NCBI GenBank assembly: GCA_964247055.1
Contig: OZ176054.1
Span: forward strand, 3,472,001-3,536,000
Length of the DNA: 64,000 bases
Reading direction: 5' to 3'
Source: Paragordius varius
Taxonomy: Eukaryota; Animalia; Nematomorpha
The notes beneath the pieces are model-generated. The model had not been told where the DNA came from, made no database searches, and saw only the letters and a program-made list of their open reading frames with translations. This document shows positions 1-40,100 of the stretch, piece by piece (position 1 is the stretch's first letter; each line of letters starts with the position of its first letter). The position numbers and the translations under genes are program-made.

Positions 1-1726
1 ATAGATTAAAATAAAAATTGCATTAAGATAAATAGTTAGTTTTACAACATAAATAACATAGCCTGTCCATAAAATTATATGTAACATTTATGGATAAATG
101 AGATGCAGCATGGTTGAAATTAACAAACGTCTTTACGAGGCAGAAGCTTTTACAAATGCCTTAACAAATTGTTATGGAGCAATAGAAAAAGTGGAAATAT
201 TATTCAGGAGCTAATCCCTAAAACAGTAATATAAATATATATTTATTGTATATAACAATAAAAAATTCATTTTTTTCTCAAACATATATTGGAAAAGCGC
301 TTTGACGGCCCAAATCAATGTCGACGCACACGACAGCCTGGTTTCTAATCTTAATGCCTACATCCTGGGAAGGTTCATAGAAAAGAACTATAACTTGCCA
401 TCAGTGATGGGTTTCCAAAACGAAAAATAATATGCTATAAATATAAAAAAGATAAGTAAATATATACAAAATTAAATAATTAATTCAGCAAGCCAAATTT
501 AATCATCATATCAGACTCGTCATAACTTTTCATCACAAAATAATTTATATTACCTTCAAATTTTCCGAATAAGGCACATCTATTATAAAAAGAAATTAGT
601 AAAATGAATTAAAAAAATATAGATCAGACAAATGCCTCAATTTCATCATAAATATATATGGGGTAGAATCTCATCACACAAGTATGTAAAAAATTACTTT
701 AGAAAGGAGGAGGAAACTTACAATGAATGAAATGAAAATTATAATATCATATGATTAAAAAATATTTTTAAATATAAATAAATCTGTACCATCACAAATT
801 ATTTAATTAGAATTAAATATTTAAATATATATATTGCATTATAATATATAATAAAAATAGTACAGCGCTAAGAATCGGAAGCTAGTATTGAATTTAGGTG
901 CATGGATATTTTAATATTAGTTGATTACGATTATAAATTAATTTTACTGTAAATTTTTGAAAAATGTTTAATTCATTTTTAATTTTACAAACCTATGGGT
1001 AATTTTGGTCTTTTGAACTTGTAAAATTAATTAAACTGTGCACAAAATAGGGATATGAGATTTATTCCGATGAAATTATAAATTCTGATAGGTAAAGGTA
1101 TGAGGTCTTGCTTTTGACTCTTACGGGAGATAAAAAGTTGTTACACTTTTATTATAACTGCTTATACATGTGCAGAAAATAAATAACCTGATAAAATATA
1201 TATACTCTGATAGGAAAATGTATTAGGATTTTATCTCGCATTCGGTTTTGGCCCTTACAAGTGATTATAGGAAAGTATTTACAATTTTTTAGTAAGTGTT
1301 CCATATCTTAAAATGGCTGATTTTGAGCATATTTTTTAAATCAAATTTTTTTTGTAAAAGCTAGTGGCTTCATTCCAAAAATATCATCAAAACATATCAT
1401 GAACTACTTATAAGAAGATAATAATCAAAATTTTAATTTTTAGATGTGGGGTCCGAAAGTAATTTTTTTCGCTCCACAATAGTTCTCTTAAAATAAATAA
1501 AATGCCAGGACGTGATAAAATTTTAAATATATGCTAAATGTATATATCAACTAAATATTTTAAAAATTGCATACTTTTCAAAATTAGTAGTTAGTAAATT
1601 TCGTATTTCGTACTATTAGGCATGATAAAATGTTATCAAAACGTTTATAAAGCACTCTTTTAATATTAGATTATACTAAAAAGTTGCTGCAGAATTTTTT
1701 AACACTCCATTACCCTAAATGATAGT

Positions 1727-2130
1727 TTATACTCAGAGCGATTCGGAATTGAATATCTTAGAAAATGTTTAAGTTATCAGATTGAATTTTAATTTAGGCT
1801 TTTAGGCGCATTATACAAATTTTTTTTACAAAAATATTTGAAAAATCTTTATCTCAAACTTTTTGCCGCCATTTTTTTCTCGAAATTTTTTTGAATCACT
1901 AATGCAAGTGGCAAAGCTTTCAGGCATTTAGCAGCAATTTAATATATTTAGATTCTTATATCAGCTGATCGTTTTAATGGTTTGGAGCTCTCCCAATTTT
2001 ACAATCTAGAATAGAAGAAACAAAACTATATTCTAAGCTTTTTTATCTAAAACATGACACCATTGTTGGATAATTAAATTTTACTAAAATATTTAAAATT
2101 TAGTTTACAAAATTTAGCTATGGGATAACT
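1727..2130. repeat. Dispersed repeat family B (core copy), probably an old non-autonomous transposon
   Basis: The motif TATA(A/C)C(C/T)CAGAGCGATT..GAATAT..TTAGCCTTTTAGGCGCAT..CTCAAACTTTTT(T)GCCGCC recurs at ~1727, ~21400, ~26840 and ~62815. Related blocks lie inverted at ~31900-32250 and ~53000-54300. Ends and class not determined. Confidence 0.6.
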
Positions 2131-3663
2131 ATCCCAATATGTATACAAGGACAAAAAGGTGAAAAGGTAATGAAGTGTTAAAGGTTCATTTGCTAAAAAA
2201 ATTTGGTGATTTTTCTGAAAAAACGTATTGATTTAACATAAATTTTAAGATGAAGGGATAATTTAATCAAAATTGTGAGGTGATAATGTTGTGCATCATT
2301 GAAATAGACAATATAAAGCTTTTCTATACCATTTCGATCTTGCTTCAGCCAAATTTACAATATGCTTTCTATAACCTTTTAGGCGTATGATCCAAAAACT
2401 TTGAAACATAAAATTTCTAAAAACCTAGTCTAAAGTTTTTGCCGTTTTTTCTTTTGGATCTTAAATCAGTAATATAACAGACAAACAAATTATAATTTAA
2501 AAATGTAAATAAATAATTTGGAAAGCTATTAATTTCACCTGCATATTAGATATCAGCTGTTTCCTTCAATGATGTTTTAGACCGTTCAAATTTAACCAAA
2601 AGTTTAAAAATTATAGAAAATATAAATCATTATACCTTATATAGTAGATCTAAGTTCGATAATTATTTACCAAAAAAACTTATAAAACAATAGTTATTTA
2701 CGAGTGGTGAAAAACTACCCAAAATGTTATCGTCCACAAAAAATGGTATTGAAGTGTTAACAGTACAATGTAATTATTTAACACAAACAAATGTTATAAT
2801 CAAAAGAGATGCTAGAAATGTTTAGCGTCATCAAATTACACAGTGATATAAAATATCCTGATGAAATACATATATTAGATGGGTGTATGAAGATTTTTAT
2901 GGTGATTTTGGTCATGGGCCCAACGAAACCCATTGATGTTAGGAAATTCATATTATTTTTTACTAATTTAATATCGTAGCAAACGATATAAAACAAAATT
3001 AAACCATAATTAAATAAATTTTCATGTTGTAAGATGGGAAAAAGTTGTAATTTGAACCATTTGCTGTTTTTTACCACGCTAGCTAGTGTATTGTTAATTG
3101 TTTAAAAATTATGTGAATCTAACAACATTATTTAAATACTGTAATATTTAATATAGATCCATATTGAACTAACGCAGAAGTTGCCTATTGTTAGATAATT
3201 TTTTTGGTCAGAGCTAAATGCTTAATGCCAAAAAATTATGTAAACAGCAATACATTATTTTTATGATATTTATTTTAAGGTGTAGGCTCCCAAAGTCTCA
3301 GTTTTTTCCCCTCAATGACCCAGTTCTCTATAAATGACGCAAAATAATTTACAAAATTTTCTTGAAGCATATTCCTTTCTTGGATGATTCAAACGGATTT
3401 AATTATAATAGGTAATTTTAGTAAAATAATTTATATTTGACCATTTAAAGACGAATGGATTCGTTAATTAAGGTTTCGAAGCATAGGAATGTTCAGCCTC
3501 ATCGAACGATAAATAAAAATTGTTTTTAATATTTAAAGCATTTTTATACCGTTTCCAGCATGTCTCAAAATAGTAAGAGGGCTTCAACGAAGTCTTGCTT
3601 AATATTATACTCTTAACAAAGCATCAATTTTTGAATAATATTTTTTGATGCCATAATTTAGAA

Positions 3664-3920
3664 CAGGGGTGTCCAGCAAGCGGCCCTTCAAAATATTTTC
3701 GCAGCAGGTGAGAAATTTCAAACATCAAATTTTACAAAGTATAAGTAAAATTAATTTTGTAAAACAAATTTCTTTAATAATTTTCGAATTTCGGCAAATT
3801 TTACACTCATGTTTGAAATTTATGTAATATTTGTTGATTTCCATATTTTTACGAATGAGGTCCGTCGAATTTTATTATCCAAAAATGCGGTCATCGAAGC
3901 TATCGTGTTGGACACCCCTG
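3664..3920. mobile_element. hAT (Charlie-like) MITE, 257 bp
   Basis: Terminal inverted repeats CAGGGGTGTCCAGCA / TGTTGGACACCCCTG with a subterminal GCGGCCC. Flanking 8-mers atttagaa / aactagaa (6/8 identical) resemble the NTCTAGAN target of Charlie elements. Confidence 0.8.
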
Positions 3921-5369
3921 AACTAGAATGAATTAAAAAAAATTTATTGCGATCGGTATTTTAGTTTTATTTTAGAAATCTAGCCCATGTTAGACGGGGG
4001 CAGAAAGCCCACATCTGCAATTCAAAAATAAAAATTGTATATTGGAAAATACGGTATATTATATATTTATTTGATATTTTTTGGAACAAAGCATTTGGTT
4101 TTTGCCACTAAAAATTATTTGGAATGCGCTATAATATAACGATTTTATGATATCAAGATATTTCGGCAAAAGTACAAATAAAGTTCTTATTAGTAAGCCC
4201 CATAACCTCCATAAGAATCCTGATAAATTTATCTTTATGCATATATTCATCAATTTTTTTATGCTCCCTGATTTTGTAGGCATATATGTAATATTTGTGG
4301 CTCATTCTAAAAATTGTATAATTAAATATCCAAAATATGGATGGAATTTATTAAGCGACATCATATTTTTTTTATTTATGCTTTGTTTTTAGCATCGGAC
4401 TATATAGGATGCGGGAGCCAAATAAAAAACTGCGAATTCAACCATTTTTTTCTTTTCTCTGAGTTATTATTGCTCAATGCCACGGTGCACACAAAGAATA
4501 TTCTAATTAAATATATATTAAAACAAATGCATTAAGATTCTTGTGCTGCTTTTGGTCTTGTTAGGAGTTAACAAAGTTGTTTGCCCTTACTGGATCGAAA
4601 GTCGCCCAAAATAGCGCTCATTTATCTGTAATATATTTTTTGTAAGGAAAAACAGCCATATATGAACAACAATGGCAAAAAATGAGCCAAACAGCTGATT
4701 CTCAATCTTTTGGCTTAGATGCTTAATTTGTTGAAAATAATTTAAATTAATAGTAAAAACACTCGTATGTTCAATAATTTATAATTTTTTAGGAAGCTGT
4801 TTTAAGTGTTTCCATAATTTTGTCATCTTCGTAAAATAATCGCTAAGCTTTGGCCAATTAAAATAAAATTCAAGCTAAAACTTACATCATAGCTATTAAC
4901 TTGTCGGACAGGCACACCTTGGAAAATTTTTCTTGTTCTAAAGCCTCAAAATTGAAAAGCTTAGCAAATATATATATAACCTCATTATCAGAAAATAGTA
5001 TATAAATATTTAAGTTATGCCATTCTTGAGTTATGATGCATAATAATTATATCGAGATTAAACTTAACATTGGAAAAAAATATACACAAAATTGACCTTC
5101 GATAACTCCAATTTATAAATTTTGACCAAAGCTTTTGTCATAAAAATGAAAACCTTTAACATCAAAATCCCGAGTTTCTTTAGAAAAAAATTTTCGAGCC
5201 ACATTGGAATTATCCATTTAAAGACAGTGGCAGTATCTAATGTTCAAGAAATTTCAGTGGTTAAAATTAATAATTACCGAACGAACTTTAGTTGTAAATA
5301 AAAAAAATGGAAATTATATTTTTAGGTTCAGACATGGAGATTCTTTCTCTTTTGGATCTAACCTATTAA

Positions 5370-7308
5370 CACTTCGATTCAAATAGGGGTATCTAAATAC
5401 CCCAGACCTTTTTCAAATTAGTATTCTTAAATAACTAACCAATAGAATTGCCCTAATTTAAATTTATGCTTCTATCTTTATAAAAATTATATAATTAAAC
5501 CAAAATAACTTAATGAAATTTAGTTTTGAAAAAAAAATCTCATCTCGAATCGGTTAACGCCAGAATTATTTTTGAATTTTTTTACCAGATTACATATTAT
5601 TTTAATTGCACAATCCCACCTCCTGTAAACATATCATAAGTATTTTCCGTTACGAAGCATAACAGAGATTATAATGTGGATAACTCCTCATCTTCTAAGT
5701 GAGGTATAAAATTATTTTATTTAGATTTTAATATAATGGAAAATCTAGCAATCCAATATAATTCGTTTTACCCCAGGCTCAAATCAATTATCCAGGACCT
5801 AACAACATTTAATTCTATTATAATCTATGACGTAAAAAATTTATGAAATTCGGAAAACTAGATTAATTTGAACATAGAAGAATTTGATGCCTTTTTAACT
5901 ATATTATCTATATACAAATTTAGGTATCTTGGTTGCTATGGGCTTGCGCAAATCATACATGGTCCCTTAAATAATCTTTTTAGGCTTTAGAACGGTTTGC
6001 AATAATATTAATGTGCCAAAAAGGTATATATACTTATATATTCTACAAGGTGCTATTTGCGTCGAAGATCTGTTTACAAAAAATCTGTAATATTTTGCCA
6101 AGCATGTCAACAGAAAAACAATCATTTATTGCGATCCTCTTAAATTGTTTGCACAAACTATGAAAATAATCTAAATAAATTATTTGGAAATAATATTTTA
6201 TTATACTATATTTATCTATGCTAAATCGGAATCCGTTGTGATTATTCATTGAACAACTCTAAATACTCACCAAAATTAACGGGCCGAATACAATATATTT
6301 TATCTATGGCCACAATATAATGCCGATAATTATTACATATATTGAGCATAACATATAACAATTATTATTAACCAATTTTGACAAATCTGATTATCATAAC
6401 AGGCCAATTTAACGTCATACCTTTATGTGTTTTAAATTAATTTTTATTTTAATGTGCCTTGATGCAAGTTAAGACAAAACAAGATCGCTTTAAAAAATAA
6501 AATATTTGGATCAAAGTTAACGAAATACTTATTAAACCAGATAAATTTTGAAGGGTTAAAAAATGAGAAATTAGCAATATTTTTTTAACAATCACAAAAA
6601 AATAATCTCATAATTGGCATTAAAATAGAGGTGCCGGGGCCGCGATAAGTTTGATTGATCTAATAATAAATAATTAACTTCTAGAAGGCAAAAAGCAAGT
6701 TTTGATTTATTTTGAGATTGAATAAATAAAAATACATAATTAGATATAAAGCATTCGGTACAACTATTCTGGGAGATCAAGATTTATATAAATTTTGATG
6801 ACCTGTTGACAAAACCCTCTTGGTGTATATGATTCTGTTTCTTTCATGATATTAATAATATTTTATAGTAAAACTAAATGTAAAATTTACTTCAGAAAGT
6901 ACGTGGAATGTGTTCTATTTATGCAAATCTCTTTACAAAATTTATAAGACTTATTTTATAGTTGCTTATCGAGATTCAATAACTGTCCAATATCTTACAT
7001 AAGGATATTCAAGTATATGTCTTTATAAGCCTATAAATTACAAAACTTGCTTTTAAAGATATTTTCTTTCTGTTATGGCGATGCTTAACATATATAATAG
7101 ATATTTGTAAATCGATTGTCTGAAACATGTAGAGACTTGAATTATAATGTAACTGTTGTATTTAGTTAATAGGCATTAATAAATATAAAATAAGCGATAG
7201 AACTTAACAACAATAGGTGTTTAAAATTATTTGCTTTACAAAGACCTGGGGTATCCAACTACCCCAATTTGAATCGAAGGACTAAAATGAATGTGTTGAA
7301 TCCAAGTG
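5370..7308 (+). mobile_element. Decayed piggyBac-like element (~1.94 kb) with family-A ends and transposase remnants
   Basis: TTAA|CACTTCGATTC left end at 5370 and CAAGTG|TTAA right end at 7308. Interrupted internal peptides resemble piggyBac DDE transposase: LGILVAMGL (~5920), MSTEKQSFIAILLNCLH (~6105-6160) and CRGRDKF (~6635). Many stops and frameshifts. Confidence 0.55.
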
Positions 7309-7769
7309 TTAAAAACTATCTCAAATTTCACTTCAAATAATCGCGTTTTGGAGCTGTCTAAATTTTAGACTCTAGAAAACTGTAAATAATAAAAACATTT
7401 ACTAATAATGTGAACAATGCTTGATAATTGAATCTTAACTAAAATATTCAAAAATGCAGTTTATTTACAAAATTTAGAACTCTCTTAAAAAAACGAATAA
7501 TTATTTTTCATAATGAAGACGAACGAATATTTTAACACTTGGATGCAACACATTAATTTTAGCCTTCAATTGAAATTGGGGTAGTTGGATACCCCAGGCC
7601 TGATTAAAACTAAATACTTCAAAACTATGGAAGAAATATAATCAAGGGTTTGCACTTATTTGACAATAATGAATAGAAAAAAGAAGTTTATTCAAAAATA
7701 CTCAATATTATTTAAGGTTAAAGCAAAGGTAAAAATTCAGTCATTGACATGTGCCCATAAATGATTTAA

Positions 7770-8346
7770 CACTTCGATTCAAATTAGGGTATCTAAATAC
7801 CCCAGACTAAATTTGAGTTAGGATTTTAAAAAAACTATTGAAGGAAACGGTCCTAATTTAAATTTATGCTTCTATCCTAATATAAATTATATAAATATGC
7901 CAAAATATCTAAATAAAATTTTGTTTTGAAAAAAAAGTTTCATGTCAAACTACTTCGACGCCATTTATTTACAAAATCTTTGCAAAATATCGTTTTCATT
8001 ATATTATAAGAGTAAAATCAAAGCTAAATTTTTATTTAAATTACATTTAACATTGATAGAAATAGAAAAAGCGGTATATTTTATAATATTTTTTAATTTT
8101 ATCATTGCACACATGTCACGTTGACTAAATTTAACCTTTAGGTTTTAGCTTAAAATAAGTAATATCAAGTATTTTTGAATAAAATTTTTTATATATTTCA
8201 GTTTATTAATGTTATACAACTGCAAAATTTTGCCATGGTTTCGATTCCTTCCATATTTTTAAAGCATTTGATTTTAAACAGACCTGGGGTATTTAACTAC
8301 CCCAATTTGAATCGAAGGACTAAAATGAGTGTGTTGTATCCAAGTG
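7770..8346 (+). mobile_element. piggyBac-type MITE, family A (577 bp, full length)
   Basis: TTAA on both sides. Imperfect TIR CACTTCGATTC / GTATCCAAGTG. Subterminal inverted GGGGTA..TACCCC blocks. Same internal sequence as the copies at 9010, 23351, 30018 and 33749. Confidence 0.85.
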
Positions 8347-9009
8347 TTAATTGGAGCGCAGATCATATAATATTTTGCAAAGGTTGTTTTTTTATTAGTT
8401 TATGATATATTTTAGTGATTTTTGGAATGGAGCCATTTTTCGCTAAAAAAATTTTATTTTAATTGTGCGCATTTGCCATTTTCAGATATGGCTCTACACA
8501 AAAGTGTAAATAACTTTCTTAAATCACGGGGCCAAAACAAAAAGCATTATGATAAATATGATATATTTTCCTAATAGAATATGTATATTTCATCAGATTA
8601 TAACTTTATACCCGTCGATTTTGGTCGCCATGTAATAAATATTATATAAATAGGCCAAAATATATAAAAAATTAGTTTTGAAAAAAGTTCTATATCAAAC
8701 TACTTCGACATTACTTTTATTTTAGAATATTTTTGCACTATCGTTTTTTGACTCCTAAAATTAAAGTTAATTTTTATTGAAATCAGAACTTTCATTGATA
8801 TAAACAAAAAAATAGTTAATTTGCATTATATCTAGCTATTGCACATTTTTGTGGATAAATTTTTATTTTCAGGTTTATTCATAAAATAAGTATCAAGTGT
8901 TTTGAAATAAATATTTTATATTTCGATTCATCAATGTTATAGAAGTTCGGCCTTTATTAATTAATTCTATATTTTAAGAAATATTTAATTTTAGGCCTGG
9001 GGTCATTAA

Positions 9010-9121
9010 CACATCGATTCAAATTGGGGTATCTAAATACCCCAGACTATATTTGATTTAGGATTTTTAAAAAATTACTGAAGAAAGCGGTCCTAAATTA
9101 AATTTATGCTTCTATCCTAGT

Positions 9122-9158
<37 letters not shown>

Positions 9159-9422
9159 AATTCAAAGCTAATTTTTTATTTAAGCGGTTTATTTGTACTA
9201 TTTTTTAATTTTACCATTGCACACATGTCACGTTAAATAAAAGTATTTTTGAATAAAATTTTTTATATATTTCGGTTTATTAATGTTATATCAGTGCAAA
9301 ATTTTGCCATGGTTTTGATTCCTCCCATATTTTTTAAAGAATTTAAATTTAAAAAAGGACTGGGGTATTTAACTACCTTAATTTGAATCGAAAGACTAAA
9401 ATGAATGTGTTGTATCAAAGTG
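9010..9422 (+). mobile_element. piggyBac-type MITE, family A (413 bp, internal deletion replaced by (TA)n)
   Basis: TTAA at 9006-9009 and 9423-9426 with both family-A ends. Preceded by an older, more diverged relative at ~8600-9004. Confidence 0.85.
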
Positions 9423-9483
9423 TTAAATAAAAAAGGTGTTAACGGTATGTTTTACTGTATTATGAAAAATATTTAAAATAATA

Positions 9484-9491
9484 GCGGCAAA
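9484..9491 (-). promoter_or_regulatory. E2F-like site (TTTGCCGC) immediately upstream of the POLA2 ATG
   Basis: GCGGCAAA at 9484-9491 matches TTTSSCGC on the minus strand, 3 nt before the start codon. Replication genes are canonical E2F targets. Motif match only. Confidence 0.35.
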
Positions 9492-9494
9492 AAT

Positions 9495-12400
9495 ATGTTG
9501 ATATCCGAGAGTACATTAATACACGAATTTGATGCATTTAATATTAAAATAGACTCACAACCATTAATTGATATGAGTATGTCTATATTTCATTTAGAGT
9601 TATCGCCTTATGTTATAAGTATGAAATATTGGAACAAAGATTCGCCAGTGAATGGTTAGCCTATGCTCTAAATAATAATTTTAACGATAAAATAGATGAA
9701 TCACTCATAATTAAATTTGAAAAAGAGGTTAATTTATCTTCTAAATTAAGATATTGTGTAGGATCAAAAAAAGAGTTCAAAAACCCAAAAAGCAAGCAAG
9801 TCCAAATAAAATATCTCAAAATTTAAATTATAAGGTAAAGTTTTTAATAATTTTAGGAGGTAAAATCATCTACTCCAAATTCCACTTATAAAAAAAATGA
9901 AAAATTATTTAATTCTAATTTCAAAAAAAGATTGTTGTTAGATGAAAGTTTATTACATACAAATTTCCCACCAAAAGATATTGCTTTTACGCAACTCCTT
10001 AATATTAGAACCTTTGATGAGAATTCAACCCTAAAAATATCAAACACTCAGTTTAAACCAATGAATTGTTTTGGCACACTCCGATATATGTATCAAAACT
10101 CTAGAGATGTACTATATGGTAATAAGAATAATTTATTGACCGATTTTTATATTCTATTTTTTTATAAACTAATAGACTTTTAACCAGTACTAACGCTTAC
10201 CTTAGTTTTTTAAAATTAAAAATATGAGATCCGCCTTTTGGTAAACCACACCTTGCAGTCAATTATTCAGATATTGAACTTGTTTCCATAAATGACTATT
10301 AAAAATATTTGCAACAGAAAAAATATATTTATTATCTTTGATTTGGCAACCTCACTTTTTTAAATTTGTTTCAAATAACCCATATGTGCTATATACAATT
10401 AGACACTACTTTAATTTAAAAGAAGTATAGATATTTTAACACACATTATACCCAATAACAAAATACCGTCTCCTAAAAACATTATTTCACGTAATTTATA
10501 TCTTTTAAAAAACTTTTAATCAATCTGGCCTGAATTTATATATGATGGAAAAATTACCATTAATGAAAATTTTTACTAATACTTTCAATAAAAAATTGCA
10601 TTGCTTTTATAAAACCTAATTATTGGATATTTATGTGTTTTTTGTGAAAAATAAAAAATTATTTATCGAGGTATCAACACATATGCAATGTTACTCGAAG
10701 TATACAAATTATTATTTCTCTCATAAAATATATGCATTTAAAAGGGTACACTTATGAATATATGATGCTTATATCTCAAATTTTGCTAAAATTTCATTTA
10801 AACTTTCTTGTTAAAGAGCAAACCATGTTTATCGATCGAATTGGGGCAGAAATTGTCGATAATATAAATAATGAAATTAATGAGGCCATTGGAGACAAAC
10901 AAAACGATAAAGATGATTCAATTAATCCTGAACCATTGGGTATAATTTAAAATAAACAAAATTTATGTATTAAGTCGCCCTATATATCGTACCATTTTAC
11001 GCAATTTATTTAATCCAAATGTTTTATCAAATTTATATTTTTTAATTTTGGTATTAAAATCTGTTTTAATTTTGCAATCACAATTTAGCATGCAAATATT
11101 ATGTCGTTTGTTAAATATGAAATATAATTTGAAATAGTTTGGAACGTTAAAATATATATATATAAATATAAATAATATCTTCTTTATTCATATTTACCCG
11201 TCCAATATCAGGCATAATTAAATTTAATTTAAATTTGGTTGTAGTTAATTATTATTAAAATATTAACAAAAACTCCAAAGTTTATCCAAATATTATTGCA
11301 TTTTAGAAGAATCAATAAATTTACCTTTACAAACAAAGCCATCCCCTTATATGTCGCAAGGCGAACCCATGTTATATTACGGACAAATAATTAACAATTA
11401 TAGCAATAGCGATTTCCGTCACGAAAATTATTTAAACAATTTTAATGAATTATTTTATTATCATCATCATACGGAAAATGGTGGTGTAATAGATAATGAA
11501 CCGAAAAAACCGCTTCAAAATCTGGTAAATACTGATTTTTTTATACAACAGATAAAACATTGTTATTTATTTTACAAATATATGCTAATATACTATTTTC
11601 TATGTTTTTACTTATTTTTTTCTTTGTGTTTAGAATCCAAAACTAACCCCTGAAACTGTGATATTACGATGCACGCATTCCATTTCTAATGGAAGTTTTG
11701 TAAAATTAAATTTATCCAAATTATCGGATTACACTCTTTTCCCAGGGCAGGTTTAAAACAATGGTTTATAATGTAACTTTTTTAAATATGTTTAGTATTT
11801 GAAAGTTTTCTCTGCAATACAGAGGGAAAACACATAAATAATATTCAGTGTAGAGTCTCTTTGTTTTTTTATTAAAAAAATGTAGTGAATATCTTATCAG
11901 ATAACAAAAACAAAGGGGAAAAATTTAAATAACTTTATTATAAATTTCAATTAATGTTCTGTTTTGTTAATGATATAAATGATATAATATTATTTCAATA
12001 AATATATTTAAAGTTTAGCTTTTAATTGTTTTTGGCTTATTATAAAACACGACTTGTTGGCAACACTTAACCTTAAACGATTATAACTCAAAAATAATGA
12101 ATTAAATTGAAAATCGGATAAATGATTATTTGCATCAGCTAATTAGTATATGATTATTATAATTTGGGTCATTGTTTTATAAAGGTGGTATCCATAATAT
12201 TTTTTAAAATTAATTATAAAATAGATTGTCGGCGTTCGAGGATATTTACAAAAGTCAACGAATTCAAAATATTCAGATAATATAGCGCAGAAAAGAATGC
12301 CTGTTTTAAATGTTGAATCGATAATATATCCATCTGTCGCGCCTAAAAGAATATTAGAAAAAGTTAAGGAAAACAGTGTTGATAACATAAACGAAATGTC

Positions 12401-13174
12401 TATTGTACATTCCAATATTTTGGTTATTTGTGGACCTTTTGCCCTAAATGAACAGACACTCCAAATGGCAAATCTCGATGTCATACAGAAAATGCTTTGT
12501 GAATACAAACCAAATCTTTGCGTCTTGGTATAATATATATAGATATATATTTAATAAATAGTACTGTCATATCAAAAAAAATTAGGAATTAAATATTAAT
12601 AATATGTGGCGTTACAAAACATTAATTTATAGGTCATTTATATAAAAAAATTCAAAATGTTAGTTACTCATTAGATTCTTAGGTGTAATGCAAAATTTTA
12701 GTTTTGGTTTTCTCAGCGATCGTATTTTTATAATGGTAATATATCTATTATTTTATTTTAGATTGGACCTTTTATGGATCAAAGAAATCATTTGTTTAAA
12801 GTAAGTTTGGGTAAATTTTATTTAAACTATTTTTCTGCTATCAAGGATTATGACAGATTATTTCACAAAAATTTTATTTTTGTGCTGCATCCCTGGAAAT
12901 TATTATTTTCATAATATTAATAACATTAACTTGTTTGCAATGAATTGTTTAAAATTAGCTTGTAAAACATGAAGAGTTTTTAAATTCTATATTCAACAAA
13001 CTAATTTCCATAGATTTAGAAAGTTTTCACCTAAAAATATGATCTATTTTTTTACGAGTGTGGCTCTTAACAACAAATATTGGCTTAAATTATTTGCTGC
13101 ATAAATATGCATATTTTTTGCCTACTTCTTCCTTTTAACCAATAACATTTATCTTTATTGTAAATGCTATCTGG

Positions 13175-13217
<43 letters not shown>

Positions 13218-15216
13218 AAAAAACTAGCAATATATTACATACACTTATACTATATTTATTATAGAATTTTCCATTCAGTATGAGTGACGAGATATTTAAT
13301 GAAGTCGAAACGTATTTATCCAATGATCAACGATCTGACTACGGAGAAGCATTTAATATGTCACAAATTGTTGAATGGATATTTGTTAATGGTTTTCTCA
13401 AAGCCCTTGTAAACATGATTCATTCCAATAATTTAGATGTTCGTTTTGCCATTATGGCTACTAACAAAGATGTATTTAATCCGTTTTGCATATACCCTAC
13501 GCCAGAGTTTAACCTTTCTCCAACTGCATATGAAAAGATGCCAGAAGTAAGCTTTAATGAGATAGTAAGGGGAAAATAGAGATGCGCTTTGATATGTATA
13601 CAGTAATTTATTAAAATAAAGCGTAAAATCCAAAAAAGTCTTTCTATAAACATCACATTTTTAAAACTTTGTTTTATTTTTAAAATTTAATATATTGTTT
13701 TGGGTCCAAAAATAAGGATATCTTATGTTTGACAATCTTATAAAAAATGTCATTTTCTTAAAAAATATTTTAGGTTTTTACTTTTGGGATTGTCCTTATT
13801 ATTTTAATATTTACCGTAAATATTTATAAATATATTTCATTCAGAAGCATATTATAAAATTTCATTCAAATGGTAGTTTTTAATTTGATCTAAAGAGCTT
13901 ATAGAACATATAATTAAAAACTATTTTATATACAATAAAATATAGTCAAATAATATCTTCTAAAATTAAATATATTAAGTCACCTATCAATAATAAAGCC
14001 GCTCACTTTTTTAATAAAACTAATTGTTTTTTATCATTCCGATTTTTTGTAATCTTTGCTCAAATAATAGTTTTCTATTTAATTAAGTTCTAATTATTTT
14101 AATGGAGAATTGTGTATAAGTGTCGAGCGACAGAAAGACTGATTAATCTAAAAAATCCATATTTGTTTAATACAAATCTAATATTGTTTTAGAAAGTTTT
14201 TTAATATTTTTCATTACATACACATAATTTGAATTTTTGGCATAGATATCATTTATTCCCGATCCTTGCGTGTTGGAAATTAATGGATGTACTATTGGCC
14301 TAACATCTATGGACACGTTATTTCAAATGAGCTCAGAGGAAATGTAATTATTTGTTACATGTAATTTTGCATTTCTAACAAATACAAAATATTTTTTTTA
14401 TAATTTAGTAAAACTAATTTTGTCTCCGATATAACGGATATAAACTGTAATAAAAAAATATTTAAAAAACATTCATATGTATATTTTTTATTTATAATGG
14501 GTGTTATATCGTTTTGTTAGTTTATTTTATTTTTTTTATTTTAATACTTTTTATCATATTTTTCAACGTTTACCCATATCAATAATATTGTGTTAATATT
14601 ATCTAATTAACAATCAAGTAATAAAACTTAAAATGTCATATGTAGATGTAAAGACTCATCGGATAGGATGGGTAGATTAGCCAGACATATAGTAGGACAA
14701 AAAAGGTATTTACATTAAATTTAAGTTTTTGCTACCTAATAATTTATGTGTTTATATTTTTAAACACTTTATATTTATTTTTTTGGTCTAGCTTTTATCC
14801 ATTGTACTTCCCATCAAACCCTGACACTCACATTGATTATGGGCTCTTTTACAAGTATGCCGTATGGAATGAGTGTCCAGATATACTTGTTTTTCCGTCA
14901 GATTTGAAGCATTTTATAAAGGTTTACTGTTAAATTTATTAATGTTTTTACCTAATTTTTTTAACCTAATAATATTTATTAGTTGAACATTAAACCACTG
15001 TATCGTCGTGATAACACCATATCTACTAATAATAATTTCTGAGTTTTATTCCTCTATAATTTACATAATTTGTAGGAGATAGAGGAAGCAGTTTATGTGG
15101 TGAACCCAGGTCGTTTCTCAAAGACGAGTAATGGAACCTTTTTACACATGTGCGTTGCAAAAAACGAAAATACCGCTGAAAAAATACTCTGCAATTTATC
15201 CATATTTAAATATTAA
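9495..15216 (+). CDS. POLA2: DNA polymerase alpha subunit B (14 exons inferred)
   Basis: Inferred exons: 9495-9576, 9600-9727, 9751-9834, 9857-10118, 10817-10939, 11307-11524, 11634-11750, 12225-12527, 12762-12800, 13265-13546, 14246-14343, 14646-14705, 14792-14921, 15076-15216. All introns are GT-AG and phase-compatible. Diagnostic peptides: DYTLFPGQ, ILVICGPF, IGPFMD, FIPDPCVLEINGCTIGLTSMD, SDRMGRLARHIVGQKSFYPLYFP, CPDILVFPSDLKHFIK, VVNPGRFSK. Confidence 0.93.
13177..13215. repeat. (TA)n microsatellite in a POLA2 intron
   Basis: Perfect TA run. Similar runs occur at ~9128, ~23951, ~43123, ~43846 and ~50117. Confidence 0.9.
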
Positions 15217-18200
15217 TAAATTATACACCAAAAATAGTTATATTAATTATTCAATTTTCATTGAATTTTTTTAATCTAGGTAAATTTTCATACATAACAA
15301 TTGATCTTAAGTATACTGATTTTGGTGTACTTAATGTGATTTAGCGTTTTGAAAAGTTTAACATTTTATTACAATTTCTATCTTTTTCTCTTTCATGACG
15401 TATTATTTTAGGAAAATTCCCTTTTTCTCCATTAATGACTGTTCTCTTTTATGTGGCAATTAATTGATTTATTTTATAAACCAACTACCAGCTGGAACAA
15501 AATGAACAAAATTAGCTAAAAATTTTTACAAATGATTTAAGCAAACAAAGATAATATTGGTACCCATAGAAGTATCTTGCTACCACAAAGATAAGAAGAG
15601 TTTTTTGTAAAAAAAATACCGAATATGTTAATTTATTAGATGTTGAAAGTTTAACTTTTAAATTCTAGTTCATCATGATATCCATTATTTAGATCTCATT
15701 TATAAGAACTTGATCTGTGCTAAACTTCACAACTCAAAAGCTACATATTCCTTGTTGTAAATACGGAATCTTCTGTTAACAATATAAACAAAAGCTAAAC
15801 TATATAATGTAAAACGCAATGAAATTACATTTAATATTATTAATTTTGTCTTTTTTATAAATATAATCCTTAATAAGCTTGAGAATGGTTAATTTTAAAA
15901 TCCACATAAAAAATAATGATCGTAATCTTTTAAGTTGTAAAAATTAATTTTGCGATGATTAATTTTCATTTATATTCTTGTTTTAACCATAATTTGTGTT
16001 GTTCAACCGTTGACAAAGGTTCATTTAATAGATGTCATGTAAAGAGAATGGAACGTCAGATAATTAATAGTGTTATAATTTTATTATTAGAATTAAGTTT
16101 GTATATGGAAAGGGGGGGGAGCGCAAAAAGATACCAATACAGTTAAAAATCTTGATAATATCTTTAAATACGGGTAATGAAATTTATATAAATAACTTGA
16201 AGTAACAGGTGCATACTTTAATTTCAACTATTCTGACACCTTTGTTTTAATAATGTAGAATTTGGCTATTTTCAAAAAAATGTAGGCTTTGTTTTAGGTT
16301 TTCATAATAAAGCACAGAGTGCGTAAGGAGCATGAGGTTCATCGCACCATTCCTTAAAAAGATTTTTTCAAACAAAAACTAATAAATAGTGTTTTAACAG
16401 AAATTTCCTGAAAAACGAAGATGATTTTCAGATTCAATGGTCATTTATATTTCATTGATAGTTTCCGCACTTTAGCTTAGCTATTGGGTTCAACCTCACT
16501 CGAGGGGGTAGGTCCAAAAGCAATGATTACTTGAGACATATTAAAGAAAAACCTGTAAGCCCTGTCACCAATTCCTACATAATTCATTTATGGCGCACAG
16601 ACGAGATTATAAATTTTAGACCCAGCCTCCTTATAAATAAGAAAAAACATTGTTGCTAAAAAATAGTAATAAGAAAAACAACTGCTTATACCCGATTTAC
16701 AAAAAGAGCCCTGCCATTTCATTTAAATAAAATATTGGTTTAGTTTATATGTTTTGGCTTCATTATTTTAATTTTTGCTGTATTTTGTATTAGTATCTAC
16801 TATATCATATCTAGTATATGATAACTAATATTTTAAACATTCTAATTTAATTCAAATGCCGTATGTAATATATTGTTGGGTAGCTAGCTCTATTTGTATC
16901 ATAAACTTTACAATAGCTGTATGTATCTTCTTCGCCCAATGCATGCGTTTGTCCCTTACAATTTTGGCACAAATGGGGTGTAAGGTATATTAACATTTGA
17001 AACCCAATATTCAATCGAATCAAAATTTTATATCGTAAAACGAATTAAAATCATTATCAGTATTGTAAAAATGATTTTTTATAATTAATAAAAAAAGAAA
17101 ATTTTTCCAAATTAAGTTATAGACACATATTATTTAATTGATTATCAACATTACATTCGAAATAATTTTTGATGAAATAAATATTAGTTAATAGTGAAGT
17201 AACCTTTGGCTTTTAATAAACGAAAATTTGATATTTTACAATATTAATTTTCAAGAATCCAATTTTTTTGCGGTCACGTAATTGATATATTTAACATATA
17301 TTTATATGCCTATTCTTAAATATTAGCAGAGTTTTTTTATAAATTTATCCTCTTTTGTATCCATCCAATGAATAGATTAATTAGCCAAAATTTATCAGAT
17401 TAAAATTTATAGCATTAACAAAGGTTTGAATTAAATATAAAGCCTAATTATACATAAATTGTTTCCAAAAAAATTTTATCCATATTTTTAAATCTGTCAA
17501 GTGTGCCCTACACCACACTTGCAAAATCTTTAAGTATTACCTTATATGATTTTTATCACCTTCGAATCAAGTTCTGCTTGACTTAAGTCGTGTAATGTTA
17601 AATTTTTTTTATCATATGAAAACAAGCCATGACTTGTAAAACTTGCAAGTCAAGTCAAAAAAAATTTTCTATCACCCGACCCCATGTCAAATAAATTATA
17701 ATATTATATCATTCAAAAGAGTAATAAAAATTTTATAAAATACATAGTAATATGTTTACATCGATGGTTAATATAGAAAATAGGAATCGAACCCGCAAAG
17801 CGATAACGTTTTTTTAACACTAATTGATGAAAACCTAAACTTTGTGGCTAATTTTTATTTTTGAGTTTATCCAAAAAAATTATATTACAAAGTTTTTTTG
17901 AAAAGGATTATGTTGCCAAGTTCACTACAAAAAAAATTATATAATTAAATTTTAACCTACACAATTTAACCGTAGTTTATTTCGTTTAAAGGGGTGCAAA
18001 ACTACCCCAACATATGTAGAAAACACTGTAGCTTGTTAAATTTAAATTATTTTTTTAAATTTTCGTACCAAAAGGGTCGCTGAGGAGCAGGCCGGGGGTG
18101 CGTGGACGCTTAAAATAACAAAAAGTTATATTTATAATTGTAATTTTTGTTTTAAATAATTAATCCGAAATTTGTAAAGTGAGAGAATATATATGAGTTT

Positions 18201-18351
18201 TATCAATACACTATATAAGAGCTTATTTATGCCTTTGAATATCTTTTAAATGTTCTTTTTTATTGTGAAATTGCGTAAAATGTAAATTTTTGGTCACATG
18301 GAAGTCCTTTATTAGTTTGTAAACTTCCACATCACCTGAAAATCTTCAAAC

Positions 18352-19090
18352 ATGGGTGTTGATATGAGGCATAATAAATTACGGAAAACTGGAAGAAAAA
18401 CTCCTAAAACTGATAATCCTTACATTGTTTTGCTCTTTAAGGTTGATTTTATTCTTAAATATAGCTTTACAAATATATGGCATCAAAAACTAATTCGAAG
18501 TTTAATCAAATTATTTTAAAACGTCTAATGATGAGCCGTAGCAATAGACCCCCTATTTCTTTAGCAAGAGTGGTAAATTATTAACATGCCTACTAAAATA
18601 TATATGCAACAATTTTTTTAATTATGTTTTATTTTAGGTTCGAAAATCTAAAGGTAAGGAAGATAAATTAATAGTCGTTGTTGGTAAGATTACCGATGAT
18701 AAGCGCATATATAAAATTCCCCAGCTTAAGGTAATTTGTGTTTAGAATTGTAGGTTTGTTCTCTATCGATATCTAAAAATGCAAGAAAAAGATTAGTAGA
18801 CGCAGGTGGTGAGTATTTTACCCTTGATCAATTACCACTTAAAGCACCGCTTGGACAAAATACTATATTATTGCAAGGTATTGTACTCACATATCCATTA
18901 ATAATTTTTTTTAAAAATAAATTAAAATAAAAATTTTTGAATAGGTCCACGTAAAGCCAGAGAAGTGTATAGACATTTTGGTTTAGCCCCTGGTGTACCT
19001 CATAGCCACACTAAACCGTATGTCCGTTCAAACGGTCGAAAGTTTGAGCGTGCTCGTGGCCGAAGGAAGAATTGTGGTTACAAATGTTAG
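18352..19090 (+). CDS. RPL18: 60S ribosomal protein L18 (eL18), 5 exons
   Basis: Exons 18352-18441, 18465-18572, 18638-18730, 18754-18877, 18945-19090. Product [12 protein letters not shown]...[18 protein letters not shown]...[41 protein letters not shown]. Introns are 23, 65, 23 and 67 nt. Confidence 0.97.
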
Positions 19091-19429
19091 TTTAATAAAC
19101 CATCTTTTTGCGAAACAAAATAAATGTTTACATTTGTCTAATTATCTTTATAACTATACTGTAGACAAGTGATATTTTATATTTTTAAAGAATATTAATT
19201 TCGCAACTACAAACGCAATAGATGAATGAAATGTTAAATTTTATTAAGGAAATAATGGAATTTAGAATCAATTAATTTTTTGAAATAGCAAAATGAATTT
19301 TATTTGCAAATAAGATGACGCGCTCATGTATTAAAATACTTTTTCCACTTAAATTTTAGTACTATAAGGAAACATTAACTTTTATAATAATCGTATTTAA
19401 AAAAAATTTACCCTTTGCTTTAACACAAA

Positions 19430-19810
19430 AATTACAGTGGACCGCCTAACCCATATTGACCACGATTGCTGGACAATGCATACGCCATTATCGGGATGAT
19501 TCTTTTTAAAAAATATTTTTAATTGAGAGCTCTATAATAACCGACAAACATTTTGGAATGAGTGTTTAACTTTGCGATTATAATTAAAAAAAATTATTCC
19601 CTTGTTAAATTCAAGAAAGCAGATGATGATCACAGGATGAGCTAATTAGTTTAAAAGCGCTGTCTCTAAAGCTTATTATGAGTCAGGGTGATATTAAAGG
19701 AGTCCATTAAAGCGATTAAAATACTTAACAAATCAACTCACCCATAACCTAAAAGGTTCTTAACGTTATCGAGCTACTGTGGGTTACTTCTTTATAAAAA
19801 TTACCAGCAT
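19430..19810 (+). pseudogene. Possible highly decayed Ty3/gypsy reverse transcriptase fragment
   Basis: Interrupted peptides IAGQCIRHYRDD (YxDD-like) and IKAIKILNKSTHP*PKRFLTLSSYCG resemble the RT core and thumb. Weak. Confidence 0.3.
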
Positions 19811-26225: not shown

Positions 26226-26544
26226 CCATTTACAGTCCAAATTCACCCTTGACCAATTAAAATTTACCCTTGAACAATTCAAATTCACCCTCGAACAATT
26301 CAAACTCAGCCTAAAGTAAATTATGTGTTTTTTTAAATTAAAAATTACCTAAATTTTTTATATTTTTTAAAAAAAATGAAATTTTGTTTAAAATTAATAT
26401 AATACTGAAAAAATAATAAACTATTCCATTAAAATATATTTCATATTAATGATGAGTTATATTAGAAAACGCATAATTTATTTTTAGGGTGAATTATTGT
26501 TCGAATGTCAATTTGAATTGAAGGGTAAATTTTAATGTAAATGG
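26226..26544. mobile_element. TA-flanked MITE, family C, with 21-bp subterminal repeats
   Basis: TA|CCATTTACA ... TGTAAATGG with tandem AAATTCACCCT(T/C)GAACAATTC units. Relatives at 42822, 46472, 54589 and 56443. Confidence 0.75.
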
Positions 26545-37176: not shown

Positions 37177-40100
37177 ATGGCGACTATGAATTGTTGCTTG
37201 GTAGCCGGACCAACCGGTTGTATGGATTACGATTTTTCATTCCGATTGAAGCGGTCATTTGAGATCAACAATCCTAAGTTTGGTAGTAGAATTGAGGCAT
37301 CCCTACCCAATAAAACAGAACAAAACGAGAAAAATCCAACAGTAAAAAGCTTAAGAAAGAAACGTGTTGAGAAACAGCCTACCATATCCCCCAATAATAT
37401 CACAGGTATGGAGGAAACAACACAACCACTCACCGATAAGGATAAAAACACATCTTTACCTACAAAGCGGAATACAGTTAAAAGATCTAATTCCCATGCA
37501 GACTTAAAATGGAGGAAGTCGGAATTAAATGCAACGGATAAAGGTTCATACCTCGGAACACATTGTGAATGGTTACCATTAGCCACTTCTTTGGACGAAT
37601 CAATGTTTGTTAATTTACTCAATTCTGCCATAAACAATGAATGTACAACAAAACCATCATGCGGTAACAAACCCATTTTAAACCTAATTGCTCAAAAATT
37701 GGATTATTATGCAATAATTGAAGAAGAATGTGAAAAATTGCAATTGTTAACTCTTTCCCCTCTGTCTCATAAACCGACGAAAAAATTGGAAACGGTTAAT
37801 ACAAATCATCCAGCAATAAAATCCCTAACTAATCCGTTATCCGAAAATAGAGAAAAAAATATATCTGATAACGTAACAACTTATACCACCTGTGCCATAA
37901 ATAATATACTTCATGAAATTTCTAATACAGATGCCAAACCGGTACCAAGAATACTTAAATCATGCCTTGCCAAATCTAAAAACAAGCCTTTACCATTGCC
38001 TAACCCCGATAAAGGTACATTGTAATTAAAAAATATCAAAAACAGTCTAAAATACTTTTTAAACTTAATAAAACAAACTGTGATACCATATTTACACCAG
38101 AAAACGGTTAACATTACATCACATACGCTAAATACAAAATATTGGTGAAAACTAAAATATACGTATATTAAAAATAAAAAAATTATAATTTATGAAAAAA
38201 GGGGTCAATAATTTGAAATGGGGATAATAAGAAATTTTATTTTTATAGTAAATAGTTAAAATGATGTGATCTTTTGTATTGTAATGATTTAAAACAGCAA
38301 AAAAATATTTAATGGTTTGCAGCTATACTCTCCCGGATAATACTTCTAATTCAAATAAATATTTAATACAGGCAAAATCACAGTTGTAAAAATGGCCAAG
38401 ATTATTTTTATAAGGTAATCATTATTCGGGCTAAATGTGAGTTAACATTACACTCATTATTTTGTTATAAAAATTTTTCAACAAGTTTATAAATGGTCCT
38501 TGTTAATTCATATATGCCAAAATAATTATTTTTCTTCTGTAAAATTATTATCTAAAAATACAGTAAATTTGGACATTTTAATTACATTTATGGCATAACT
38601 TGTAAGATGGCTAAAATTAATGGATTTTGCAAAAATATTATTTAAAAATGTTATTAATAAATGTTCCTTAGATTTTTATGATTTGGAAATCGTTATTATA
38701 TTTATTATCTTACCTTACAGATGATGATGACAAGAATATAACAGGTTTGGCCTTCCAATTAGCTGACAACAGCAAACCAAATGAAGAAAGACCCATAGTA
38801 ATTGTAAACGATCCCTCACTCGATGATGCCAATGTTTTGACCCGTTCAGCATCTGATTCCAATCTCAATGACGCCCCAGATAACAGTACTTTGAGTGCCC
38901 TAAATTATGAACGTAGACCCCGATCAATATTACACATGAATAATTTGGAGTTGATTGAGGCGTCAGAGAATGATAGGAAAAAGAAAAGGGTCATTTTTGC
39001 AGATGATGTCGGTCAAAATTTGTATTCAATCAAGATCATGGCTGAAGCTTCGGAAAATCCGCCTGAATTCCTCTTCTCTCAAGTGTCCCATGAAAAAATA
39101 TTGGCTGAGATACATCGAACTAGCTCAGATAATCACAGAGGTCAAACACCATCTACTACAATCACAGGTGGTAACTTTCTTGAAATGGGTACAACGGGCA
39201 AGATAACAAACAAGGACAATATGTTTGAAACCTTTGCTAACAAAGGCCTTGACACCTTAAATAAAGTGTTTCGAATATCTGGTTTTCCTTCGACTAATGA
39301 TAACAATATAGGTGCTAATAAGAGTTCAACGACCACAATCAGCCAAAATTCCTGCTTGGATGCAAGAGAAAAGATCTGCCGTTGGTTACCTGAATTCCCA
39401 ATGCCCATAGTTAATTACCAAAAATATCGAGAAAAACTTGAGAATAATTGGATTGGGCTTGAAACTATTCACATTGTTTATTCTGACTCAATGTATAACA
39501 CGACGAATCGTGTGTCAGACTACAATATGGTAGGACGGGTTAGGGTCAAAAACATTGCTTATGAAAAACAAGTCTTTGCTCGAGTAACGTATGATGGCTG
39601 GAAAAATTTTACTGACATACCTTGTTTATTTGCACCACCAACGAATTCTCTTGGTCCAACAACAACATCAGCTTCAAGCAAGAATTTTGCCCTGCTTTAC
39701 GATGAGTTTGTTTTTGAAATTAGATTAGCTACTCCGACAGCCACCAAAGTGCCTACATCAAACGCAACTAATGATGTTTCTAACCAAGCATCACCGTATT
39801 CTATCGAATTTGCTTTATGTCTAAGGTATAAAATTATCTAAGAGTTAAACATTATAATGTAACAGAGAAATACCTTTTGGGGTTAACAATAGCATAAATA
39901 TTATCATCCAAATTATTTTTATAAGTTGACCTCTTTTTTACCTTTTGCAACTTTTCATAGTATAATATTTTTTACCTAAATAGGCTAAATATTATTATTT
40001 TAAAATATTGCGCTGATTTAAAAAGGTTTTATGCCGACCAAAGTTTGTAGCTGTTCTTTTAATTTATTACGTTTTTTGTGGTTTTTCCCTATTATACAAA

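What the first reader, a model, noticed from the sequence alone, without database searches (positions are those of the whole stretch)
18442..18753. Two 23-nt spliceosomal introns in RPL18: anchor evidence for an animal micro-intron class
Introns 18442-18464 (GTTGATTTTATTCTTAAATATAG) and 18731-18753 (GTAATTTGTGTTTAGAATTGTAG) are each 23 nt. That is not a multiple of 3, and they fall exactly between conserved eL18 blocks (LLFK|LYKY and PQLK|VCSL), so only their removal gives full-length L18. From recall, these junctions and the 108- and 124-nt exons match human RPL18, which would mean ancestral introns shrank rather than new ones arising. Introns this short are established in Paramecium, Stentor, nucleomorphs and dicyemids but lie well below the usual metazoan minimum. 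Here they occur in a repeat-rich, non-compact genome.
Basis: partly seen in the sequence, partly recalled or inferred. Interest (0 to 1): 0.9.

Follow-up and report, generated by a model that had tools for sequence, protein, structure and literature searches.

The report
Two 23-base introns in RPL18
The ribosomal protein gene RPL18 of this AT-rich animal genome is interrupted by two introns of only 23 bases that sit exactly where lizards, sea stars, scorpions and lamp shells have introns of hundreds to thousands of bases, so ancient introns shrank in place to near the physical minimum; RNA proof of the cutting is still missing.

Summary
Observation confirmed; interpretation supported except that I obtained no RNA. 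A five-exon eL18 gene lies at 18352-19090 (+), with exons of 90/108/93/124/146 nt and GT-AG introns of 23, 65, 23 and 67 nt.

- **Junctions.** The exon pieces tile eL18 without loss or gain at either 23-mer: residues 30|31 and 99|100 in standard numbering. Keeping either 23-mer shifts the frame into stops.
- **Ancestry.** Exact gene maps of amphioxus, Lingula, Asterias, Centruroides and Anolis all give exons 3/87/108/99/124/70/76. All four introns here therefore sit at pan-bilaterian positions and phases, and the two 23-mers replace introns of 446-12982 and 260-2222 nt.
- **DNA support.** DNA contigs from four public runs (three samples, two studies) contain both 23-mers with no length change. 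This rules out an assembly artefact.
- **Selection.** Nine of the 11 exonic SNPs are synonymous in the spliced frame (p=0.001). The 23-mers carry SNPs at intron-like density.
- **Missing.** I found no RNA run, no hairworm orthologue and no public protein for this gene.

The scan has noted the same 22-28 nt intron class many times elsewhere in this genome (said to be a hairworm), and POLA2 in this window has three more. No paper in the library links such introns to Nematomorpha.

The parts
18352..18441 (+). RPL18/eL18 exon 1 (90 nt, residues 1-30; equals ancestral exons 3+87 fused)
18442..18464 (+). micro-intron 1, 23 nt, GT..AG, phase 0, after residue 30
   Evidence: Present in DNA contigs of X1 (two haplotypes), X2 and X3, with SNPs at 18445 and 18455 but no indel. 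Orthologous introns are 88-12982 nt in six other animals.
18465..18572 (+). exon 2 (108 nt, residues 31-66), same length as in five other bilaterians
18573..18637 (+). intron 2, 65 nt, GT..AG, phase 0, ancestral position after residue 66
   Evidence: Contigs of X2 and X3 run into unlike sequence inside it.
18638..18730 (+). exon 3 (93 nt; ancestral 99 nt minus two codons near its start)
18731..18753 (+). micro-intron 3, 23 nt, GT..AG, phase 0, after residue 97 (= 99 in standard numbering)
   Evidence: Present in DNA contigs of X1, X3 and X4, with SNPs at 18740 and 18745 but no indel. Orthologous introns are 260-2222 nt.
18754..18877 (+). exon 4 (124 nt), same length as in five other bilaterians
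18878..18944 (+). intron 4, 67 nt, GT..AG, phase 1, ancestral position after residue 140 (standard numbering); holds a low-complexity repeat
18945..19090 (+). exon 5 (146 nt = ancestral 70+76 fused) with stop TAG at 19088-19090
19094..19099 (+). AATAAA, likely polyadenylation signal, starting 4 nt after the stop
   Evidence: read from sequence; function inferred
9577..9856 (+). Same class in the neighbouring POLA2 gene: micro-introns 9577-9599 (23), 9728-9750 (23) and 9835-9856 (22)
   Evidence: Their removal opens one frame across 9495-10130. Exon 9602-9727 hits Pol_alpha_B_N with E 5e-7.

Best explanation
The two 23-nt segments are genuine U2-type GT-AG spliceosomal introns of a functional, single-locus eL18 gene. 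They descend from two introns that were already at these codons in the bilaterian ancestor and have shrunk in place to 23 nt. The other two retained ancestral introns stand at 65 and 67 nt, and two further ancestral introns (after residue 1 and after residue 163) were lost.

The inferred working is as follows. The spliceosome of this animal recognises the intron as one unit. The 5' site is G|GT(A/T)(A/T/G), and the branch adenosine probably lies about 6-7 nt before the 3' AG. All five micro-introns in the window have an A at position 16, and most also at 17. The 3' sites are TAG, AAG or GAG.

Because 22-23 nt is not a multiple of three, an unspliced transcript runs into a premature stop, so errors would be caught by mRNA surveillance.

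Shown here: the anatomy, the orthology of positions, presence in DNA, and purifying selection in the spliced frame. Inferred: the act of splicing, the branch point and the surveillance step.
For: - **Gene model.** 561-nt CDS, 186 aa, and frame breaks if either 23-mer is kept.
- **Homology junctions.** They are exact on PDB eL18 chains and on Pfam PF17135.
- **Gene maps.** Exact protein-to-genome maps of Branchiostoma, Lingula, Asterias, Centruroides and Anolis all give introns after residues 1, 30, 66, 99, 140 and 163 in phases 0, 0, 0, 0, 1, 2. The nematode Teladorsagia has introns after residues 1, 30, 99 and 140. The window's four introns match in position and phase.
- **DNA contigs.** Contigs of four runs (three samples, two studies) are colinear with the window through both 23-mers, with no joints and no indels there.
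- **SNPs from those contigs.** Eleven are exonic: 9 synonymous plus I78V and D113E. That compares with an expected 32% synonymous, binomial p=0.001. Nine of the 11 sit at third codon positions of the spliced frame, in exons on both sides of each 23-mer.
- **SNP density.** Exons 2.0%, the 23-mers 8.7% (4 in 46 nt), the 65/67-nt introns 7.6%. Exon versus 23-mer gives Fisher p=0.02, and 23-mer versus long intron is not different.
- **Splice sites in variant haplotypes.** GT, AG and the length of 23 are kept.
- **Same class nearby.** POLA2 in this window has three more introns of 22-23 nt.
Against: - No RNA evidence. Every run that holds the locus behaves as DNA. The RNA runs filed under the same species label hold none of the gene's words.
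- No spliced junction was found in JGI metagenome or metatranscriptome contigs.
- No protein more than 65% identical to the spliced product turned up in the public collection.
- The extended 5' sites (GTTGAT, GTAATT) are weak matches to the usual GTAAGT. The branch point is only guessed from shared A positions in an A-rich sequence.
- One X3 contig shares only 18438-18467 and then diverges. This is unexplained.
Confidence: 0.85

Rival explanations
1. The locus is a decaying or unexpressed RPL18 copy that happens to carry two 23-nt insertions. The working gene lies elsewhere.
For: No RNA was seen. One X3 contig branches off right after micro-intron 1, which could hint at a second copy.
Against: The 'insertions' lie exactly at two ancestral intron positions, with GT..AG ends. 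Nine of 11 exonic SNPs are synonymous in the spliced frame, and the two replacements are conservative. There is no stop or frameshift inside any exon. The two haplotypes stand at equal depth, as for a single heterozygous locus.
Confidence: 0.04
2. The 23-mers are assembly or sequencing errors (spurious indels).
For: None found.
Against: Independent contigs from X1/X2, X3 and X4 (three samples, two studies) contain them at full length, some with their own SNPs.
Confidence: 0.01
3. The segments are removed from DNA rather than RNA, by programmed elimination of short internal sequences as in ciliate IES excision. Somatic cells would then carry an uninterrupted gene.
For: The length range resembles ciliate IESs. 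The tissue of origin of the DNA runs is unknown.
Against: No contig in four DNA runs lacks them, and no joints were reported. The ends are GT..AG, not TA..TA. The positions are those of spliceosomal introns in six other animals.
Confidence: 0.03
4. The 23-mers stay in the mRNA and are bypassed in translation, or are cut out by a non-spliceosomal nuclease as with the 26-nt XBP1/HAC1 intron.
For: The size is close to the XBP1 intron (my own knowledge).
Against: GT-AG ends and ancestral spliceosomal positions. A housekeeping ribosomal protein gene is an unlikely target. Five such segments occur in two unrelated genes of one window. I did not test for paired IRE1-type stem-loops.
Confidence: 0.01

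Closest known systems
Dicyemid mesozoan micro-introns (Dicyema: median 27 bp, two thirds under 30 bp; Ogino 2010 as cited in PMC6543705; PMC6736024)
   Same: Animal GT-AG introns under 30 nt that sit in a conserved exon/intron structure, meaning ancestral introns shortened in place. The Dicyema genome also has many repeats (49%).
   Different: In Dicyema nearly all introns are tiny and the genome is 67.5 Mb with about 5,000 genes. Here 23-nt introns alternate with 65-67-nt ones inside one gene, and kilobase introns are reported elsewhere in the genome (earlier notes, not tested here). The lineage is said to be Ecdysozoa (hairworm) rather than Spiralia. Lengths in this window fall in a very narrow 22-23 nt band.
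Orthonectid Intoshia linei short introns (median 57 bp, PMC6543705)
   Same: A parasitic animal with shortened introns. The 65-67-nt introns here resemble that size class.
   Different: [quoted passage not shown] No discrete class near 23 nt is described.
Ciliate and nucleomorph tiny introns
   Same: Spliceosomal introns near a physical minimum, with a narrow length distribution. Lengths that are not multiples of three give premature stops on retention.
   Different: Those are protists or reduced endosymbiont genomes. Stentor and Paramecium lack a second class of ordinary long introns.
Canonical bilaterian RPL18 gene (exons 3/87/108/99/124/70/76)
   Same: All four introns of the window gene are at canonical positions and phases. 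The 108- and 124-nt exons are unchanged.
   Different: Introns after residue 1 and after residue 163 are lost. Exon 3 is two codons shorter. Intron lengths are 23/65/23/67 nt against 113-12982 nt.

Membership tests
eL18 / RPL18 (Pfam PF17135) | Significant match to the family profile over its full length | tested here: met
   Exons 2, 4 and 5 each score 51-67 bits against a cut-off of 28. All five exons hit eL18 chains in the PDB. The pieces tile positions 1-188.
U2-type GT-AG spliceosomal intron | GT at the 5' end and AG at the 3' end | tested here: met
   Both 23-mers. The dinucleotides are kept in the variant haplotypes.
U2-type GT-AG spliceosomal intron | Position and phase orthologous to accepted spliceosomal introns in other species | tested here: met
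   Six outgroup genes mapped exactly.
U2-type GT-AG spliceosomal intron | Branch-point adenosine and pyrimidine-rich tract upstream of the 3' site | tested here: inconclusive
   All five micro-introns of the window have an A at position 16, and most also at 17, with T-rich sequence around it. In a 26% GC genome this is weak evidence.
U2-type GT-AG spliceosomal intron | Absent from mature mRNA | not testable with these tools
   No RNA run holds the locus. The single read-laying run showed DNA only.
Ultra-short intron class (dicyemid / ciliate type) | Length under 30 nt with a narrow distribution | tested here: met
   Five cases in this window: 23, 23, 22, 23 and 23 nt. The sample is small.
Ultra-short intron class (dicyemid / ciliate type) | Retention gives a frameshift or premature stop (length not a multiple of three) | tested here: met
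   for all five.
Ultra-short intron class (dicyemid / ciliate type) | Genome-wide prevalence as a distinct peak in the intron length histogram | not tested
   Only earlier scan notes on other windows speak to this. I made no histogram.

The most novel reading that the evidence does not exclude
An ordinary, free-standing animal phylum (hairworms) with a large, AT-rich, repeat-bearing genome runs two discrete splicing size classes side by side. One is a tightly ruled 22-23-nt class and the other a class of 65 nt or more, both at ancient intron positions.

This would be an independent origin of sub-30-nt splicing in animals. Because standard gene finders and aligners skip such introns, it could also account for part of the low universal-gene (BUSCO) completeness reported for hairworm genomes.
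Probability: 0.6. Interest if true: 0.75.

Novelty: new member of a known kind. Interest (0 to 1): 0.68.

Why it matters
Introns of 23 nt are far below what animal spliceosomes are thought to tolerate outside dicyemids. RPL18 is about the cleanest possible anchor for such a class. It is highly expressed and universally conserved, and its exon structure is now shown to be identical from lizard to lamp shell. The tiny introns can therefore be dated as shrunken ancestral introns rather than new insertions.

One gene carrying 23-, 65-, 23- and 67-nt introns gives a natural test bed for how a spliceosome handles two size classes.

There is also a practical consequence. Aligners and gene predictors with minimum intron settings of 30-40 nt will break such genes. 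I could not find a correct protein for this gene in a 15-billion-protein collection. Gene-loss claims for this phylum should therefore be rechecked with short-intron-aware settings.

Tried and rejected
- **RNA evidence.** Both sequencing-run runs returned only runs that turned out to be colinear DNA. They also listed five small 'RNA?' runs under the same species label that hold none of the gene's words.
- **Junction search.** Two spliced-junction patterns of 38 nt found nothing in JGI metagenome contigs.
- **Hairworm orthologue or own spliced protein.** The spliced protein has no reference and I did not type it. I tried to tile the five exon pieces onto scaffold eL18 proteins with MAFFT instead. 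Most attempts misaligned (A2, A3, A5-A9). A4 and A10 were usable.
  - The A4 profile search returned mainly vertebrates.
  - The A10 profile search returned mainly nematodes and arthropods.
  - Nothing in either list is more than 65% identical to the window protein.
- **Exon-5 fragment search.** The best hits were 83-87% identical. P0362 led to contigs of an unrelated animal in ENA metagenome assemblies. That animal has no intron at residue 99. P0363 had no DNA available.
- **Exact look-ups.** Four ORFs of the window are not in the collection.
- **Synteny.** RPL18 is head-to-head with a DAGK_cat gene in amphioxus and Lingula. The window gave no tblastn hit to it.
- **Latimeria.** Its eL18 was not on record.
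- **Left out.** The exact look-up of the 186-aa spliced product in the look-up of encoding contigs or the listing of cluster members, because the string has no reference.

Full report
**What is there.**
Reading 17800-19600 and assembling exons in a script gives a five-exon gene on the + strand. The exons are 18352-18441, 18465-18572, 18638-18730, 18754-18877 and 18945-19090. The CDS is 561 nt, the product is 186 aa, and the stop is TAG. AATAAA starts 4 nt after the stop.

The four interruptions are 23, 65, 23 and 67 nt long. All start GT and end AG, and their phases are 0, 0, 0 and 1.

**Is removal required?**
Each exon piece was searched separately against PDB sequences.
- Exon 1 covers residues 1-30 of human-type eL18.
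- Exon 2 covers residues 31-65/66.
- Exon 3 ends at residue 99.
- Exon 4 starts at residue 100.

Pfam PF17135 agrees: exon 2 matches profile positions 31-66, exon 4 matches 100-140, and exon 5 matches 142-187. In alignment A4 the five pieces tile full-length eL18 edge to edge.

Keeping the first 23-mer shifts the frame and ends in a stop 25 codons later. Keeping the second meets an in-frame TAG inside the 23-mer. An internal AG in the second 23-mer would give a 15-nt intron and the wrong frame, so only the 23-nt removal works.

**Are the positions ancestral?**
I fetched annotated eL18 loci with the look-up of encoding contigs. I then solved the exact exon chain that reproduces each protein.
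- Branchiostoma belcheri, Lingula anatina, Asterias rubens, Centruroides vittatus and Anolis sagrei all have exons of 3/87/108/99/124/70/76 nt.
- Their introns lie after residues 1, 30, 66, 99, 140 and 163, in phases 0, 0, 0, 0, 1 and 2.
- The nematode Teladorsagia keeps introns after residues 1, 30, 99 and 140.

The window gene reads 90 (=3+87) / 108 / 93 (=99 minus two codons) / 124 / 146 (=70+76). All four of its introns therefore sit at pan-bilaterian positions and phases, and two ancestral introns were lost.

Among the five species with the canonical structure, the intron after residue 30 is 446-12982 nt and the one after residue 99 is 260-2222 nt. In the nematode they are 88 and 2002 nt. 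Here both are 23 nt.

Human DNA was not examined. The lizard stands in for vertebrates.

**Artefact or pseudogene?**
The single read-laying run covered 18100-19300 in runs X1, X2, X3 and X4. It showed contigs colinear with the genome through introns and flanks at even depth, with no joints. I therefore take all four runs to be DNA. They cover three samples and two studies.
- Micro-intron 1 is spanned by two haplotype contigs of X1, two of X2 and two contigs of X3.
- Micro-intron 3 is spanned by contigs of X1, X3 and X4.
- No indel is reported in either 23-mer.

This removes the assembly-error explanation.

The variant haplotypes carry SNPs at 18445 and 18455 (micro-intron 1) and at 18740 and 18745 (micro-intron 3). 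GT, AG and the length of 23 are unchanged.

Of the 11 exonic SNPs, 9 are synonymous in the spliced frame. The other two are I78V and D113E. Given the transition bias, the expected synonymous share is 32%, which gives a binomial p of 0.001. Nine of the 11 fall on third codon positions of the spliced frame, in exons both before and after each 23-mer. They would not do so if the 23-mers were read through.

SNP density is 2.0% in exons, 8.7% in the 23-mers and 7.6% in the 65/67-nt introns. The gene is therefore under purifying selection in exactly the frame that splicing of the 23-mers creates, and the 23-mers evolve like introns.

By contrast, contigs of X2 and X3 run into unlike sequence inside the 65-nt intron. 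X3 does the same 24 nt upstream of the ATG. This suggests that structural variation is tolerated there but not in the 23-mers.

**What I could not get.**
There is no RNA. The 'RNA?' runs filed under the same species label hold none of the gene's 31-mers. Junction patterns are absent from JGI contigs.

The profile and fragment protein searches returned nothing more than 65% identical over the full length, and no own-species fragment. Four ORFs of the window are not in the collection.

I therefore found neither a hairworm orthologue nor any public gene call for this gene. The exact look-up of the 186-aa product was left out because it has no reference.

**Context.**
POLA2 starts at 9495 in the same window. 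Removing 9577-9599 (23 nt), 9728-9750 (23 nt) and 9835-9856 (22 nt) opens a single frame to 10130. Its second exon hits Pol_alpha_B_N.

The five micro-introns share G|GT at the 5' end, an A at position 16 (most also at 17), and TAG, AAG or GAG at the 3' end. A branch point about 6-7 nt before the AG is my inference only.

Earlier notes of this scan report the same 22-28-nt class in many other windows of this genome. They call the organism a hairworm related to Gordionus. One note says RNA showed such introns being removed in another gene, which I did not verify.

I did not test the taxon myself. The window's 22-32% GC is in line with the 26.9% GC and 64% repeats published for Gordionus montsenyensis (10.1101/2023.06.26.546503). 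That paper never mentions introns and reports 71.6% BUSCO completeness.

**Comparison with the known.**
Dicyemids have a median intron of 27 bp in a conserved exon/intron structure (PMC6543705). The mean is 38 bp in a 67.5-Mb genome with 49% repeats (PMC6736024). The orthonectid Intoshia has a median of 57 bp.

No paper in the library combines Nematomorpha with short, tiny or ultra-short introns.

The present case works like the dicyemid one, in that ancestral introns shortened in place. It differs in lineage, in mixing 23-nt with 65-67-nt introns inside one gene, and in its very narrow length band.

**Verdict.**
I rate it a new member of a known kind. The same class has already been found by this scan on other DNA of this genome.

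What this locus adds:
- exact six-species orthology of the intron positions;
- population-genetic support for the spliced frame;
- exclusion of assembly error.

Noticed in passing
window 9495-10130 (+), and about 14748-14933: POLA2 starts with three micro-introns of 23, 23 and 22 nt. An ORF near 14748-14933 looks like the POLA2 C-terminal region (from memory, not tested), so the gene would span about 5.6 kb and mix tiny and larger introns.
   Followed up: partly
window 18573-18637 and upstream of 18328: Contigs of runs X2 and X3 leave the window sequence inside the 65-nt intron (at 18611/18615). X3 also leaves it 24 nt upstream of the ATG. This suggests structural polymorphism in the longer intron and in the promoter region, while the 23-mers are invariant in length.
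   Followed up: no
window 18438-18467: One 192-nt contig of run X3 shares only these 30 letters (micro-intron 1 plus 4+3 flanking nt) and then diverges. It may be a second copy or a divergent allele in 'organism B'.
   Followed up: no
window 18901-18933: A low-complexity A/T element inside intron 4 gives loose ends in all four runs, so it is repeated elsewhere in the genome.
   Followed up: no
L001:1-830 and L002:1-1401: In amphioxus and Lingula, RPL18 lies head-to-head with a DAGK_cat (sphingosine-kinase-like) gene, a possible ancient microsynteny. The window gave no tblastn trace of it.
   Followed up: partly
L007-L010 (ENA metagenome assemblies): An unidentified animal (34% GC; genes with SOCS box and Nup85) has an eL18 gene with no intron at residue 99 and short introns (about 47 nt at residue 140). 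Its neighbouring genes are called as strings of small ORFs with tiny gaps, which suggests another short-intron animal hidden in metagenomes.
   Followed up: partly
window 26238-26312, 42829-42905, 55040-55162: Short tandem arrays with 21-nt units. The first two share the same unit (CAAATTCACCC...), so they probably belong to one dispersed repeat family.
   Followed up: no
window 38678-39841 (+): A 387-aa open frame whose C-terminal part looks like a CBM21 / PPP1R3-type glycogen-targeting domain (from memory, not tested). It is unusually long for an exon in this window.
   Followed up: no
runs X7-X11: RNA runs filed under the same species label as the DNA runs hold none of the 31-mers of this highly expressed gene. 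This hints at a label or species mismatch among public hairworm data.
   Followed up: no
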